Origin: Oikopleura dioica
Taxonomy: Eukaryota > Animalia > Chordata
Assembly (NCBI GenBank): GCA_907165135.1
Contig: OU015568.1
Span: 11,036,001-11,100,000, forward strand
Direction of reading: 5' to 3'
Length of the DNA stretch: 64,000 bases
Positions 11,794 through 15,931 of the stretch are shown here, in pieces. Within the stretch, counting starts at the first letter, position 1. Each line of letters begins with the position of its first letter. Below the pieces are notes generated by a model. That model did no database searches. It was not told where the DNA came from and saw only the letters and a list, made by a program, of their open reading frames with translations. The position numbers and the translations under genes are program-made.

Positions 11794-12594
11794 CAACCGT
11801 GCTTTCAGCAGCAACATTCTAGAGGCCCAAATTTCCTGTGCAATTTAAAAGTATTCTATCCTTTCATACCCTATTCATGGATATTTAACAATTCTTTTTT
11901 AATAATCACTAATATCTATTCGAGGAATTCCTTTCACAAGCAATTTCGAGCTACAAAAATTGTAAAAACACTCGCGGTAAAAATTTCATATTTTTTATCC
12001 CACCAACATTTGCCTATCAGTAAAAAGTAATTGTTCTGATTAAATTACTGCAACACCCCCTTCATTAAAAATATTATTATTAAATATAACGAACAGGGCC
12101 TTTCCGATTAATGTAGCTAGAAAATATTTACTTGATCACGTGAGAGGTGGCCGTGGACTATTTTATTATTTTCGGGGATCGGACAGTGGAGAGACAGGAC
12201 TTTACTGCACCCTCTGGTCCCGCGCTAAAGTGTAAAAATTAATTTTCCTCCGTCCAATCATTGAATACAAATCTCATCTCCAATTTCTGTTAAATAGTTC
12301 AAAAGACGACCTATATAAGAAGACTCACTTACCCGTATAATATGCTCCTTTATATTTACTATTTGGTGTTGTAGCCTTTGAACGCTGTTCTCTCAAACAT
12401 AATAAAGTTTGATATACAAAATTTCACTACTTAGAGTATCCAGCTTGTTCGAGTGTTATGCCAGCTGGTCCTTAGTCAATTATAATTTATATACGCAGGC
12501 TCGGAAAATTATGCAGAAAGCAGAGTTAGGGTCATGAAAAACCAATCTTCAAACAATTCTGTAGGAGTATTTTTTTCCTATCAGTCAATCAATA

Positions 12595-14952
12595 GAAGGA
12601 GAATCGCATCATACGTTATCGACAATTGAATGAACAAGAACTAGCTAGAAAAAAGAAGAAAAGCTTTCATCCGTTCGACGCCGCGGAAATCATTTCAAAT
12701 GATCAAGTAGAAGTGATGGATTTTTTCAGAAATATTTTTGCAGGGAATAAATTGAAACTTGCCGAAGTAGAGGAATTTCTTGCTGACTACTCAAAAAATC
12801 TTAAAAGGACGACAACGAGAACGCAGAAATGCCGACTGATTCAATCATTGGAGAGACATGATTTCGAAAAAGATAAAACACCACAATTTTGGAACTGGTT
12901 TATGTTTAAAAATTGCAGTAGTGGTATAAAATGCCATGTTTACAATGAAAATAATCAAATTATGGAAGAATTCAATGCGACGGAATTCCAACAACATTTG
13001 ATTTGTGACTTTGCCGATGAGGATTTACTAGAGAAAAGAATTTGTCGATGGGAAATCAAGGAAGAAACAGGTGACTGGGAACGGTCTGGTTGCTCGAACG
13101 GGGAGAGGCCCTTATTACTGATGAGACGATTAAACATGATGTGAAAGTCAGGTTTCACCCGTTCGACTCGGGACTGTTTACCGATTTTTTGCCCGTTGAA
13201 GATGTTGATTTCAAAATTCACCTTCACACAGGTTCTTTGTAGATAAGTTTCATAAGTTTTTCAACATTTTGCTATGGCTAGATTATCAAAAAGCGACCAA
13301 GAAGAGGAAAGACAAACGAATACCTTCTCATAAAAATGTCGTCGAGCATTTGGTCAATATAGAAATTTTTGCTAAAGTGGATAAAAATGATTGTTTGGGA
13401 TGGATTACTATTATGGAGAGAGCTGATTCAAATTTGAGGGAAGCATTGCGAAAAGGAAGCCAGGCAAAAAACAGCCTGACTCTTTTGGAGCGAAAGAAAA
13501 TTGCGATGGACATAAGAGACGGCCTCAAGTATCTATTCTCTATTGATATCTGGCATTTGGACAAAAAGTTGGAAAACATTTTACTTTACAAAAAGAAAGA
13601 TGAAATTGTGGCTAAATGGATTGATTTTGGGCTTGTAATGAACACATCAATGTCAGAGAGTTATCGTCAAATGGGCTACACACGACGCGGTTCTAAATTC
13701 ACTAATCATTTCTCCCTCTGTATGTGTGATTTATTAAATATTATTCTCTAACGAAATATTAGATTGTGGAACTCCCGGCTTTTGTTCGAAAGCTCAGATC
13801 ACGGCAGCTGCGCGGGGACACCAGGACAGCGCACTTGACTTGCGGAAGATCTTTTTCTTTCTTTTCTGTGGATGGAAAGCAGCTTGGTCAATTTGTTACA
13901 AACCAATAAATGAGACTGAAAGGTTGCAGATAGATACTGACTTGAAAAAATGTAGACTCGATTGGCTTCTAAAGAAACCAATGCAGACAAATGACAATAT
14001 GCCAGAGTATGAAGACTTCCGAAAGATCAATGGTATTTTACATTTACCCCCGCAATGCGTTGCAGATTTCGATGATGAATGGATAACAAAGTCAATAAAT
14101 ATGGCTCAATTGAAGATGCAACTGACAAGGAACTATTTCTCGGACTTTCAATGCCTAACAAAGAATGTTCTTGACCAAAAAGACACAAACTTATGCGTTC
14201 CGATTTCTGTTTCGGTGCTCCTTCGCTTTGCTATCAAAGACTTTGCAATGAAATCCGCTGGAGATAAACGGGCTCTGCAAAATATCGACAAGATATTTTC
14301 GATTGAAAAAATATTAACTGTCATGGTTATGCATGTTTATCCAAGAAGCTTGGCCGGATTGAATGCAAACCCGAATAACGAGGAGAAAGAAAATCAGCTT
14401 TGCGGGATTGATATGCTCATTGAAAGATTGTGTGCTCCTACATACTCGGATCCTAGTGGTTGGGAAATCATAAGAGATTATATCCAGGATTACTATTCTT
14501 CTGATACTGGGTTTTTTACTGGAACATATTGTTCTTTCAAAGAAGGTTTATTTAATGCGTCTGTAAATATAACAGTCATTTTAGTAATAATCCACGAAAA
14601 CTATCAATTCGAACAACCACTAACAGTTACTGGAGCATATTTACACCAAAACGGGGTGGTGATATTTCATCAAATGGTTGTTGATGGGATTGTCAATTCA
14701 AATTACATCATACAGAGTTCTGACCCGCATTCAGGAGCGGTTTTGCGAATAGCTCAAGACAGAGCTTACTATGCTAGCGAAGCTTATTGCAGATCATCTA
14801 TTGATAGCTCAGTGGGACTTTGTCACAATCAGGAAAACGGCGTATCTATGATATTGGTGAACGAGCATGTTAATGATACTGTGGTGCTCATGGAACATGA
14901 AGAATGGTACCTTGAGCCACATGCATATTTGTTGCGGCTTGTGCGACAATAA
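12595..14952 (+). CDS. Atypical (non-RD) protein kinase fused to a C-terminal papain/C39-like Cys-His domain
   Basis: Kinase motifs WITIMERADSNLRE, HLDKKLENILL, WIDFGLV, then after a GT-AG intron (about 13720-13762) YCGTPGFCSKAQ continuing in frame into ORF 13840-14952, which has DQKDTNLCVPISVSVLL and FHQMVVDG...YIIQSSDP. -1 frameshift at a G-run near 13077. The 5' end is uncertain. Confidence 0.7.
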
Positions 14953-15097
14953 AGGTATCGCAATTCTTCCAGTCTGTTTTTAATTAATAATAAAGAGTGA
15001 ATCCTCGATATTCTCAATAAGATTCTGACAAATTATTCAGCAGGAAAGGATAATTTTCATTTTGATAGAGCAAAGCAAACATAAACGATTTTATATC

Positions 15098-15931
15098 ATG
15101 ATCAAAGCGCATTTAGTCACGATTCGTGATGATTTTCAACAATCTCGTGCGAAATTTGAAAATCGCATGCAAAGAAGATTTTTTCCGATTTGTATTTTTT
15201 TTCTTGAGAGATAAAATTTGCACCAGAACGCGATGTTGACTCTCGTCGATCTGATTGACGAGAACCGTGAGTTATGAGATATTTTTTGCCAAGGAAATTT
15301 TAAATTTTTATAGTTTCGCTTGAAGGAAAGATTGTTGACTTGCTGGAAGCAGAGATGTCGGCGAGGAGAGAGCTTCTTCAGGAGAAAAGTCAGCGCCAGA
15401 AAGTAATGTTTGGGTTCGTTGAGTTTTTCTCGACAATTTTAGATCGAAGCCTATGTAGACACGCTTCAGGAATACATCCGCCATTTGAAACGGAGGAATG
15501 AGATTTTATCCAACGGGTTGGAACGCATTTTCAGTTTATCTTCCTTCAAGCTAGTCTTCTATGTTTTCACCCGAGAAAAAGTAGCCCAGCAGACATATGA
15601 GCGCTCAACAATCCTCAACGATCTTAGGGAGCTCAATCTTGAAATGACATCTGTTCGAAAGGAGAAAGAAGATTTGAAGAAGAAGCGAGAAAAGTCAAAA
15701 GCAACTAGAACTGATCAAGATTGTCCAGTCTGCCAGACACAATATGGAGGAGAGAATGTCCTTGTTTGCTTCAAAACTTGCGGACATTGCCTTTGCTTCA
15801 CATGGTAAAAAGTAATACAAAAGAAAAACTCAAATTTCAGTGCGAAAAATATCACAACTTCGCCACTCAGCCACTGTCACATTTGCCGCCGAGAAGTTTC
15901 TCAGAGTTCCATTCTCAAAATATTTATGTAA
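15098..15931 (+). CDS. Coiled-coil plus C-terminal RING-HC finger protein (putative E3 ligase)
   Basis: Spliced C-terminus CPVCQTQYGGENVLVCFKTCGHCLCFTCAKNITTSPLSHCHICRRE...KIFM*; upstream heptad-rich exons. 5' exon junctions only partly resolved. Confidence 0.75.

What the first reader, a model, noticed from the sequence alone, without database searches (positions are those of the whole stretch)
12595..14952. Non-RD kinase fused to a papain/C39-like cysteine-peptidase domain in one polypeptide
Seen: a kinase with HLDKKLEN (HRD replaced by HLD), DFG and GTPGFCSKAQ (no APE) splices in frame into a 370 aa exon containing DQKDTNLCVPISVSVLL and FHQMVVDG...YIIQSSDP. Established: clan CA (papain/C39-like) peptidases have an oxyanion Gln five to six residues before the catalytic Cys at a helix start, a His opening a beta-strand, and an Asn or Asp after the next strand (DP in C39-like). 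Non-RD kinases are enriched among innate-immune signalling kinases. Inference: a lineage-specific kinase-protease signalling or defence module. Its last exon (about 1.2 kb, intronless) is atypical among the small-exon neighbours, and the motif FHPFD occurs twice in the N-terminal part. I know of no characterised animal protein with this architecture.
Basis: partly seen in the sequence, partly recalled or inferred. Interest (0 to 1): 0.78.

Follow-up and report, generated by a model that had tools for sequence, protein, structure and literature searches.

The report
Kinase joined to papain-fold peptidase
This is one divergent, probably damaged and apparently silent copy of a roughly 100-member, unstudied Oikopleura gene family whose single protein joins an unusual kinase domain to a papain-type cysteine peptidase domain that no domain database recognises.

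Summary
Window 12596-14952 (+) encodes a kinase core (Pfam Pkinase 3.5e-11; HLD..N, DFG, GTPGF) spliced through a 43-nt GT-AG intron to a C-terminal domain with no Pfam or PDB sequence match. An AlphaFold model of a paralogue's domain (pLDDT 84.5) matches only clan CA cysteine peptidases: all 50 top rows, best Z 9.8 to C1 enzymes and 9.2 to C39. Its Gln-x5-Cys and His-x15-Asn spacings equal papain's.

The fusion is not unique. The 64-Mb genome holds at least 129 kinase-exon and 141 peptidase-exon matches, lying side by side (about 100 genes). All database relatives are Oikopleura dioica proteins or marine metagenome fragments.

- The "intronless" last exon hides a 39-nt in-frame intron (14546-14584).
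- The family's conserved third catalytic residue is an Asn, which is Ser in this copy. It is not the Asp of "DP".
- The first FHPFD lies before the first ATG.
- A 14-nt out-of-frame gap (13082-13095) breaks the kinase N-lobe.

Four RNA runs show no reads over the gene. Yet dN/dS against a 97% identical metagenome allele is 0.15. This scan had already met the family on other DNA of this genome (s1-386991, s1-348280, s1-330350, s1-406145). Function is inferred only.

The parts
12596..13081 (+). Family-specific N-terminal region (frame 2). The first in-frame ATG is at 12716. No ATG sits at the paralogous start. The first FHPFD (12665-79) lies upstream of that ATG.
   Evidence: tblastn of paralogues P0008, P0021, P0042 and P0019 aligns their residues about 9-126 here. 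No Pfam hit.
13082..13095 (+). Out-of-frame gap (frame 2 to frame 1) inside the kinase Gly-rich-loop region. It is a deletion of about 10-16 nt relative to paralogues. The frame-2 ORF then stops at 13142-44.
   Evidence: Paralogues read W-(11-13 aa)-GGEA in one frame with no intron there. The window has 23 nt between the W codon and GEA, and the homology switches frame.
13071..13105 (+). Candidate 35-nt GT..AG cryptic intron that would restore the frame (..IKEET-E-ALITDET..) at the cost of the Gly-rich-loop remnant. Unverified.
   Evidence: Read directly from the sequence. There is no RNA support. Inference only.
13096..13231 (+). Kinase N-lobe remnant (frame 1): ERGEALIT.. VKVRFHPFDSGLFT .. 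FKIHLHT. An Arg stands where the beta3 (VAIK) Lys is expected, as in all paralogues. Holds the second FHPFD (13153-67).
   Evidence: tblastn to paralogue residues 134-178. The family alignment A5 shows a nearly invariant AVR. The beta3 assignment is by manual alignment; HMMs do not align the N-lobe.
13232..13281 (+). Intron, 50 nt, GT..AG, phase 1 (g|at gives Asp).
   Evidence: Sequence. Paralogues show the same frame change after ..HL/NL.
13282..13719 (+). Kinase core exon, from subdomain IV (HKNVVEHL) to the activation loop. Holds HLDKKLEN (13554-77) and DFG (13623-31).
   Evidence: Pfam Pkinase E 3.5e-11, 43.4 bits against a 31.7 cut-off, profile positions 75-161. The family profile hits CDK9, TTK and BRAF chains at 1e-7 to 1e-5.
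13720..13762 (+). Intron, 43 nt, GT..AG, phase 1 (t|at gives Tyr).
   Evidence: Sequence. Paralogue protein models read continuously across it. 7% of its positions differ from the allele, against 1.7-2.7% in the exons.
13763..14165 (+). Rest of the kinase C-lobe (GTPGFCSKAQ at 13768-; the CGWKAAWS alphaF-like motif) and the linker to the peptidase domain.
   Evidence: Translation and alignment A1. The equivalent linker residues 1-56 of the paralogue model have low pLDDT.
14166..14545 (+). Peptidase-fold domain, first exon part (helical L-lobe). Holds the oxyanion Gln 14176-78, the catalytic Cys 14194-96, and the family-invariant YPRSLAGLN.NP and SGWE motifs.
   Evidence: Alignments A2-A4. Model m15a724341741 puts the Cys at the N-terminus of helix 63-79. 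Gln 56/59 and Cys 56/59 conserved.
14546..14584 (+). Cryptic intron, 39 nt, GT..AG, phase 1, in frame and stop-free in this assembly.
   Evidence: Paralogue models lack these 13 residues. Allele L021 has a stop inside it and differs at 2 of 39 positions.
14585..14952 (+). Peptidase-fold domain, second part (beta-sheet R-lobe). Holds His 14668-70 and Ser 14716-18 at the family's Asn position (His+16). Stop TAA at 14950-52.
   Evidence: His 70/74 and Asn 68/81 in the family; the window has Ser. In the model the His lies in strand 200-212 and the Asn position follows strand 215-219.
14989..14994 (+). AATAAA, the likely polyadenylation signal.
   Evidence: Sequence only. No reads were available to confirm it.

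Best explanation
The locus is a member of a large gene family found so far only in Oikopleura (larvacean tunicates). There are about 100 copies in this 64-Mb genome. Each gene encodes one cytosolic protein with three parts: a family-specific N-terminal region, an atypical protein-kinase domain, and a C-terminal, highly divergent clan CA (papain/C1-C39-like) cysteine-peptidase domain.

Kinase domain (shown): the catalytic loop H-x-D-x-K-x-x-N and DFG are conserved. HRD is usually non-RD. By my manual alignment (an assignment, not shown by any HMM), an Arg stands where the beta3 Lys is expected.

Peptidase domain (shown): it carries Gln-x5-Cys on a helix N-terminus and His-x15-Asn on the beta-sheet.

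Inferred mechanism: the peptidase domain is a working Cys-His hydrolase of peptide or isopeptide bonds. Its activity or targeting is coupled in cis to the kinase-like domain, which acts as regulator, sensor or scaffold. The size and divergence of the family, its frequent broken copies and its mostly non-RD kinases suit a conflict, defence or reproduction role.

This particular copy is an isolated, divergent member (41-46% identical to its best paralogues over the full-length peptidase domain). It keeps Gln, Cys and His but has Ser for the Asn. It lacks the paralogous start codon and carries a frameshifting gap in the kinase N-lobe. It gave no reads in four RNA runs. Its 3' 1.5 kb has nevertheless been under purifying selection. 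So it is either very recently disabled or still expressed in some rescued or truncated form.
For: - Kinase: Pfam Pkinase above the cut-off. The family profile hits CDK9, TTK and BRAF chains. D, K, N and DFG are invariant in A5.
- Fusion conserved: at least 129 kinase-exon and 141 peptidase-exon matches lie side by side in the own genome. Full-length O. dioica models P0008, P0018, P0019 and P0042 carry both parts. A very divergent metagenome contig, L023, has the same kinase-then-peptidase order.
- Peptidase fold: AF2 model with pLDDT 84.5 and pTM 0.79. VIA-align against 48,161 chains gave 50 of 50 top rows in clan CA: C1 at Z 9.8-9.4 (rmsd 3.5-4.0, 149-161 aligned) and C39 at Z 9.2. The weak Foldseek top hits and the Atlas hits are also C1, C39 and DUBs.
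- Motifs: Gln-x5-Cys and His-x15-Asn are conserved at 56/59, 56/59, 70/74 and 68/81. Profile matches to aminopeptidase C align both the Cys and the His motifs. Peptidase_C1_2 is the most recurrent weak Pfam hit. ESM-feature neighbours are 56/100 Peptidase_C1.
- Selection: dN/dS 0.154, p = 6e-8, against allele L021.
- Lesions and silence.
Against: - No sequence method gives a significant match to any peptidase family.
- The model is of a paralogue (P0012:77-369), not of the window copy. The window's own model was poor (pLDDT 48).
- No biochemical data exist, and no paper on this family was found.
- An Arg at the beta3 Lys position would normally inactivate a kinase, so the kinase part may be a pseudokinase.
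- This copy lacks the Asn and is frameshifted upstream.
- No RNA evidence supports any splice junction.
- The defence or conflict role rests only on family size and pattern.
Confidence: 0.72

Rival explanations
1. This copy is a functional gene. The apparent frameshift is either an assembly error or is removed by a 35-nt GT..AG intron (13071-13105). The gene is expressed at a stage, sex or tissue not sampled.
For: dN/dS is 0.15 over 1.43 kb against an independent allele, which is far from neutral. No stop interrupts the three downstream exons. A GT..AG pair at 13071/13105 restores the frame. The gene's other introns are 39-50 nt.
Against: Homology to paralogues runs through both sides of the putative 35-nt intron, and paralogues have no intron there. 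Splicing it would delete the Gly-rich-loop remnant. There is no ATG at the paralogous start. Depth is zero in four RNA runs, while the gene 200 nt upstream has 35-83x. The allele contigs do not reach the lesion, and no other allele was found.
Confidence: 0.35
2. The C-terminal domain has the papain fold but is not a protease. It may be a deubiquitinase or UBL-deconjugase, a transglutaminase, amidase or acyltransferase-type enzyme, or a catalytically dead binding module.
For: Clan CA includes all of these chemistries. UfSP, ATG4, ZUFSP and viral PLpro appear at Z 6-7.7, and DUBs appear among the Foldseek rows. Strongly invariant non-catalytic motifs (YPRS..G.N.NP, SGW) suggest a specific conserved ligand. 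This copy lacks the Asn.
Against: The best structural matches are C1 and C39 endopeptidases. The Gln/Cys/His/Asn set and its spacing are those of papain, and these residues are conserved in about 84-95% of family representatives, which argues against a dead module at family level.
Confidence: 0.25
3. The kinase part and the downstream ORF are two separate genes or mRNAs that merely lie next to each other.
For: No transcript evidence exists for the 13720-13762 junction in this copy. Many database models are peptidase-only or kinase-only fragments.
Against: The kinase fold itself is split by that intron: the activation loop GTPGF and the alphaF-like CDW..WS motif lie in the downstream exon. The two parts lie side by side in about 100 paralogues. 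Several independent full-length models and a divergent metagenome contig share the order. No ATG or stop separates them in frame.
Confidence: 0.04
4. The family is cargo of a mobile element or virus, and its copy number reflects transposition, not host gene duplication.
For: High copy number, many broken copies, and earlier notes of transposon insertions in some copies.
Against: Copies are 36-59% identical at the protein level, which is old divergence and not a recent burst. They share host-type 39-50-nt introns at conserved positions. Many matches lie close together in a few chromosome regions. No transposase or terminal repeats were looked for or seen next to this copy.
Confidence: 0.04

Closest known systems
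Papain family C1 (C1A cathepsins/papain; C1B bleomycin hydrolase / aminopeptidase C)
   Same: Two-lobe fold with a helical L-lobe and a beta-sheet R-lobe. The Cys sits at a helix N-terminus and the His on a strand. The spacings Gln-x5-Cys and His-x15-Asn are the same as papain's Q19-C25 and H159-N175 (my knowledge of papain numbering). It gives the best structural Z-scores, 9.8-9.4. The motif v-DQ-x5-C-x2-S aligns with an Oikopleura cathepsin and with PepC's QKxSxxC and H-x-M-V-L. Like C1B, it has no signal peptide or propeptide.
   Different: No significant sequence match: Pfam C1 and C1_2 are not met. About 10% identity in structural alignments, with rmsd 3.5-4 A over only about 150 of 235 residues. 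It lacks the CGSCW and KNSWG signatures. It has its own invariant YPRS..G.N.NP and SGW motifs. It is fused behind a kinase.
Peptidase C39 (bacteriocin-processing domains of PCAT1 and ComA ABC transporters)
   Same: Minimal clan CA core, Z 9.2-8.6 with the lowest rmsd (2.9-3.0 A, 125-130 aligned). It has a Gln/Cys/His plus acidic-or-amide fourth residue at similar spacing. It works as a domain fused to another enzyme module.
   Different: C39 domains are about 130-150 aa, bacterial, and N-terminal to a transporter. There is no Pfam C39 or C39_2 match. The helical lobe here is much larger.
EDR1/CTR1-type Raf-like kinases with an N-terminal EDR1 domain (PF14381)
   Same: A papain-like-fold domain and a protein-kinase domain in one polypeptide. 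EDR1 is linked to disease resistance and cell death (PMC10318531).
   Different: The order is reversed: the EDR1 domain is N-terminal to the kinase. The EDR1 domain belongs to the transglutaminase/C71/C93-like branch. There is no sequence relation. The kinases are conventional RD Raf-like enzymes. They are not a 100-member lineage-specific expansion.
Non-RD kinases of innate immunity (IRAK, RIPK and plant XA21-type; established knowledge, Dardick and Ronald 2006)
   Same: HRD is replaced (HLD here; H-R/K/Y/C/F/H/S-D across paralogues), in a large, fast-diverging family.
   Different: No death, LRR or other immune-type domain is present. No homology closer than to generic kinases such as CDK9, TTK or BRAF. 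Arg stands at the expected beta3 Lys position. The immune role is untested.

Membership tests
Protein kinase superfamily (Pfam PF00069 Pkinase) | HMM match above Pfam's gathering score | tested here: met
   Exon C scores 43.4 bits against a 31.7 cut-off, E 3.5e-11, but only profile positions 75-161 of 263. Paralogues score 34.6-38.5 bits.
Protein kinase superfamily (Pfam PF00069 Pkinase) | Catalytic loop (H/Y)-R-D-x-K-x-x-N and DFG | tested here: met
   HLDKKLEN and DFG are present in the window. D, K, N, D and G are invariant across 11 paralogues. The Arg of HRD is not kept (non-RD).
Protein kinase superfamily (Pfam PF00069 Pkinase) | Beta3 Lys (VAIK) and Gly-rich loop | tested here: inconclusive
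   By manual alignment the family has A-V-R (Arg) at the expected Lys and S-E-G-G-E-A for the loop. HMMs do not align the N-lobe. In the window the loop region is hit by the frameshifting gap.
Clan CA (papain-like fold) cysteine peptidases | Papain-like two-lobe fold | tested here: met
   The paralogue model (pLDDT 84.5) gave 50 of 50 top VIA-align rows in clan CA, Z up to 9.8, 22 chains at Z >= 8. Foldseek found no match at E <= 0.001, but its weak top rows are also mostly clan CA. Atlas TM scores of 0.39-0.46 are to C1 and C39_2 clusters.
Clan CA (papain-like fold) cysteine peptidases | Catalytic Cys at the N-terminus of the central helix, preceded by an oxyanion Gln | tested here: met
   Cys63 of the model starts helix 63-79. 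Gln-x5-Cys is conserved 56/59. It is present in the window at 14176-78 and 14194-96.
Clan CA (papain-like fold) cysteine peptidases | Catalytic His on a beta-strand, followed by an Asn or Asp that orients it | tested here: inconclusive
   His is conserved 70/74 and lies in strand 200-212. Asn at His+16 is conserved 68/81 in the family. In the window the His is kept but the Asn is Ser (14716-18).
Clan CA (papain-like fold) cysteine peptidases | Cys-His pair within catalytic distance in 3D | not testable with these tools
   Model coordinates are not exposed. Only secondary structure and alignment ranges are returned.
Peptidase family C1 (Pfam PF00112 / PF03051) | Significant HMM match to the family model | tested here: not met
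   The window domain and six paralogues have no hit. Across 116 members, only 3 hit PF03051, best E 0.0036. PDB profile match to PepC has E 0.36. hhalign to an Oikopleura cathepsin exon gives E 0.75. It is therefore not filed as a C1 member.
Peptidase family C39 | HMM match, and a double-glycine leader substrate or transporter context | tested here: not met
   No Pfam C39 or C39_2 hit. The context is a eukaryotic kinase, not an ABC transporter. The resemblance is structural only.

The most novel reading that the evidence does not exclude
Larvaceans have evolved a previously undescribed class of two-enzyme intracellular proteins. In them, an atypical (Arg-for-Lys, non-RD) kinase-like sensor is wired in cis to a new family of papain-fold peptidases. 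The class has expanded to about 0.5% of the gene set (taking about 18,000 genes, from my memory of the published genome), as a diversifying innate-defence or genetic-conflict arsenal in an animal that lacks most canonical immune receptors.
Probability: 0.2. Interest if true: 0.85.

Novelty: new variant of a known kind. Interest (0 to 1): 0.52.

Why it matters
If the family is active, it would be a new clan CA peptidase family, invisible to Pfam, in a domain architecture (kinase followed by papain fold) with no characterised animal example. At about 100 copies it is one of the largest lineage-specific expansions in one of the most compact animal genomes. That makes it a candidate for larvacean innate defence, genetic conflict or reproduction, all of which are poorly understood. 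It also gives a natural series for asking two questions: how a kinase with Arg at the beta3 Lys position but an intact catalytic loop behaves, and how kinase and protease activities can be coupled in cis. This particular copy matters less. It mainly shows how members decay or diverge (a frameshifting gap, Asn to Ser, a stop-free in-frame intron that imitates a long exon) while still showing purifying selection.

Tried and rejected
- Pfam on each exon separately: only the kinase core hits.
- phmmer or hmmsearch of the domain and of profiles A2 and A4 against PDB sequences: nothing significant. EsaI at E 0.1-0.6 is judged spurious. PepC at E 0.36 is kept only as a motif-level lead.
- P0176 alone against the PDB: nothing.
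- AF2 of the window's own contiguous ORF with 31 paralogues: pLDDT 48, unusable. It was replaced by a paralogue with a 116-sequence alignment.
- Foldseek against the PDB: no E <= 0.001.
- hhalign of A4 against an Oikopleura cathepsin exon: only the DQ..C motif aligned, E 0.75.
- RNA: the index found no run holding the stretch, and four raw-read RNA runs gave zero depth over 12488-15025. No splice junction or transcript end could therefore be verified. The runs come from a strain 1-5% different from the assembly.
- Search for an allele covering the frameshift: the metagenome pattern scan found nothing, and the word search with the frame-2 ORF found only one 42%-identical paralogue. Contigs L021 and L022 start at 13431.
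- An upstream ATG exon spliced into 12596: I tried the obvious donor and acceptor pairs by eye and none keeps the frame.
- Bleomycin-hydrolase ancestry: PF03051 finds nothing in this genome, so it could not be supported or excluded.
- Transposon-cargo and two-gene readings were rejected for the reasons given under rivals.
- Joined spliced protein: not built, searched or folded.
Full report
**1. What is at the coordinates**

The window is G000:C1:11036001-11100000 of a 64.3-Mb, 19-contig assembly. Every named protein relative is from Oikopleura dioica. The introns are the tiny GT..AG kind typical of that animal.

On the + strand I read the following gene:
- 12596-13081, frame 2. The first in-frame ATG is at 12716.
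- A 14-nt stretch, 13082-13095, across which homology to paralogues jumps to frame 1.
- 13096-13231, frame 1.
- Intron 13232-13281 (50 nt).
- Exon 13282-13719.
- Intron 13720-13762 (43 nt, t|at gives Tyr).
- Exon 13763-14545.
- Intron 14546-14584 (39 nt).
- Exon 14585-14952 (TAA at 14950-52), with AATAAA at 14989-94.

**2. The kinase**

Exon C alone passes Pfam's Pkinase cut-off (43.4 bits, E 3.5e-11), but it covers only profile positions 75-161.

A profile of eleven paralogues' kinase regions (A5) hits CDK9, TTK, BRAF and PLK4 chains at 1e-7 to 1e-5. Again the match runs only from subdomain IV (HENVV) to just past DFG.

In A5 the catalytic Asp, the Lys and Asn of the catalytic loop, and the D and G of DFG are invariant. 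The residue between His and Asp varies (R, K, Y, C, F, H, S; L in the window).

Downstream, GTPGF and a CDW..WS motif (alphaF-like) lie in the next exon, so the kinase fold itself spans the 13720-13762 intron.

Upstream, I align S-E-G-G-E-A with the Gly-rich loop and A-V-R-V with VAIK. This is a manual alignment. It places an Arg where the beta3 Lys belongs in essentially all paralogues. That would normally cripple phosphotransfer, so catalytic status is open.

**3. The C-terminal domain**

Sequence methods give nothing significant:
- Pfam.
- PDB sequences.

The ESM-feature search put 56 of 100 neighbours in Peptidase_C1 clusters at score 0.92. This is a lead only.

The exhaustive HMM search of 1.84 billion representatives found 207 proteins at E <= 0.001. 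The ones I inspected all belong to the same family and most are short fragments. Two of them, traced to their contigs, come from marine metagenome assemblies, one of them labelled PRJEB4352.

With 116 of these sequences as alignment, AlphaFold2 modelled paralogue P0012:77-369 at mean pLDDT 84.5 and pTM 0.79. Residues 57-293 are mostly above 90. An earlier model of the window's own ORF with 31 sequences was unusable (pLDDT 48).

Structure searches with the good model gave:
- VIA-align against 48,161 PDB representatives returned clan CA cysteine peptidases in all 50 listed rows.
  - C1 enzymes (calotropain, xylellain, cathepsin B, Der f 1/Der p 1, falcipain, caricain) at Z 9.8-8.8, rmsd 3.5-4.1, 149-164 aligned.
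  - C39 domains (PCAT1, ComA) at Z 9.2-8.6 with rmsd 2.9-3.1.
  - Then staphopain, UfSP, ATG4, ZUFSP and coronavirus PLpro.
- Foldseek found nothing at E <= 0.001, but its weak top rows are the same families.
- The ESM-Atlas shape search gave C1 and C39_2 clusters at TM 0.39-0.46.

In the model the conserved Cys opens helix 63-79. The conserved His lies in strand 200-212. The conserved Asn follows the next strand.

The spacings Gln-x5-Cys and His-x15-Asn equal papain's Q19-C25 and H159-N175 (papain numbering from my own knowledge).

Across the 50%-identity representatives, these four residues are kept in 56/59, 56/59, 70/74 and 68/81 sequences.

Weak collinear sequence signals agree:
- The A4 profile aligns its QK.S..C and H.MVL motifs with the catalytic Cys and His regions of aminopeptidase C, 4k7c (E 0.36).
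- Peptidase_C1_2 is the Pfam family hit by the most members (3, best E 0.0036).
- hhalign against an Oikopleura cathepsin exon pairs VFDQKSTNLCVPIS with VKDQGQCGSCWAFS (E 0.75).
- A divergent member, P0176, reads HAV...VIKNSD, which is close to papain's HAV...KNSWG.

I conclude that the domain has the clan CA fold with a papain-type catalytic set. It fails the membership test for C1 and for C39 as sequence families. It is best called a new, very divergent clan CA family.

**4. It is a family, not a one-off**

The peptidase domain finds at least 141 matches in the own genome and the kinase exon at least 129. They lie in adjacent pairs, for example C1:16211357 with 16212131, and C2:12505042 with 12505865.

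Most peptidase matches are split in two by an intron, so this corresponds to roughly 100 genes. Many of the matches lie close together in a few regions: C1 15.4-16.6 Mb, C1 5.5-6.0 Mb and C2 11.6-12.7 Mb. Several show internal stops.

Full-length O. dioica models carry both parts. These are P0008 (692 aa), P0018, P0019 and P0042.

A metagenome contig (L023) encodes a member only about 24% identical to P0012. It also has a kinase ORF directly upstream.

Two full-text searches found no paper on the family.

The nearest published architecture I found is the plant EDR1/CTR1 type. [quoted passage not shown]

This scan had already met the family on other DNA of the same genome, and follow-ups reached the same reading (s1-386991, s1-348280, s1-330350, s1-406145). 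I tested the shared claims independently here.

**5. What is special, and wrong, about this copy**

(a) The "intronless 1.2-kb exon". Paralogue models read C.F.K-V.LN.NF.F.RPLTVTGAY. The window has 13 extra residues there, bounded by GT..AG (14546-14584, 39 nt, phase 1). In the 97%-identical allele on marine metagenome contig L021, that stretch contains an in-frame stop, and it differs at 2 of 39 positions. It is an ordinary small intron that happens to be stop-free and a multiple of three in this assembly.

(b) The third catalytic residue. The family's Asn (His+16) is Ser in the window (14716-18).

(c) The 5' third.
- Paralogues read EETGxW, then 11-13 residues, then GGEA in a single frame with no intron.
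- The window has 23 nt between the Trp codon and GEA, and the homology changes frame.
- The frame-2 ORF ends at 13142-44.
- There is no ATG at the paralogous start. The first in-frame ATG (12716) lies after the first FHPFD, which is therefore probably untranslated.
- The second FHPFD is the family's V-R-x-x-F-D segment.
- A GT..AG pair at 13071/13105 (35 nt) would restore the frame but delete the loop remnant. This is only a possibility.

(d) Expression. In four raw-read RNA runs (three oligo-dT bulk, one single-cell), depth is 0 from 12488 to 15025. The + strand gene that ends with a poly(A) tail at about 12412 has 35-83x. Reads there are 95-99% identical, so the runs come from another strain.

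(e) Selection. Between the window and allele L021 (window 13431-15393), the coding parts differ at 21.5 synonymous and 13.5 non-synonymous changes: dS 0.078, dN 0.012, dN/dS 0.154, and binomial p = 6e-8 against neutrality. By part, dN/dS is 0.06 for the kinase, 0.12 for the linker and 0.20 for the peptidase.

So the 3' 1.5 kb has been kept by purifying selection until very recently. Either the lesion is recent or an assembly error, or the gene is rescued or used in a shorter form. I cannot decide between these with the data at hand. My odds are about 55% recently disabled or silent, 35% functional, and 10% other.

**6. How it most likely works**

Shown:
- One gene encodes a kinase-fold domain and a clan CA-fold domain.
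- The catalytic-type residues of both are conserved across a large family.
- No Pfam domain other than the kinase was found.

Observed by eye, not tested: no signal peptide.

Inferred:
- The peptidase domain is an active Cys-His hydrolase of peptide or isopeptide bonds.
- The kinase-like domain controls or targets it in cis. It could do so by phosphorylation (the invariant YPRS Ser is a candidate site), by nucleotide-dependent conformational change, or as a pseudokinase scaffold.
- The family's size, divergence, proportion of broken copies and non-RD character fit defence, conflict or reproduction.

I give about 0.9 to the architecture, about 0.6 to catalytic competence of intact members, and about 0.2-0.3 to a defence or conflict role.

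**7. Limits**

- The good structure model is of a paralogue.

Noticed in passing
window 12300-12412 (+): The upstream neighbour gene ends with AATAAA and a poly(A) addition site at about 12412. It is well expressed (35-83x) in the same RNA runs that show nothing over the kinase-peptidase gene. All reads carry four fixed differences from the assembly (12321 A>T, 12357 T>A, 12378 T>A, 12392 C>T), so the runs come from another strain.
   Followed up: partly
window 14546-14584: A 39-nt intron is stop-free and in frame in this assembly. ORF-based reading and some database gene models (for example P0001, P0016, P0032) run into or through it. The allele L021 has a stop in it.
   Followed up: yes
window 12665-12679 and 13153-13167: The two FHPFD-coding stretches share 14 of 15 nucleotides (tttcatccgttcgac and tttcacccgttcgac). 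Only the second corresponds to a family-conserved segment. The first sits where paralogues have their start codon. This could be a micro-duplication or chance.
   Followed up: partly
G000:C1:11009940-11016334 (20-26 kb before the window start; loci L025, L029): Two canonical Peptidase_C1 (cathepsin-type) genes lie about 33-40 kb from this gene. This is probably coincidence. The whole genome gave only 19 exon matches to PF00112.
   Followed up: no
whole genome G000: Pfam PF03051 (Peptidase_C1_2, bleomycin hydrolase / aminopeptidase C) finds no match at E <= 0.01 anywhere in this assembly. A canonical bleomycin hydrolase may be missing, or may be split into exons too small to score.
   Followed up: no
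L023:801-2412 (marine metagenome contig, ERZ508537): This very divergent relative (P0176, about 24% identical to P0012) reads HAVTLYFEDQNEFVIKNSD, closer to papain's HAV..KNSWG. A kinase ORF lies directly upstream. The architecture therefore predates the O. dioica expansion, or exists in other larvaceans.
   Followed up: partly
P0148 (489 aa), P0041 (290 aa): Some representatives show odd joins. P0148 has a peptidase-domain fragment followed by a DnaJ domain (Pfam 2.3e-19). P0041 has two successive peptidase R-lobes. These are probably merged gene models or tandem copies.
   Followed up: no
window 15485-15808 (+): A downstream ORF ends in a Cys/His-rich stretch (CPVCQ...CFKTCGHCLC) that looks like a RING-type zinc finger. 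It is probably the next gene on the + strand.
   Followed up: no
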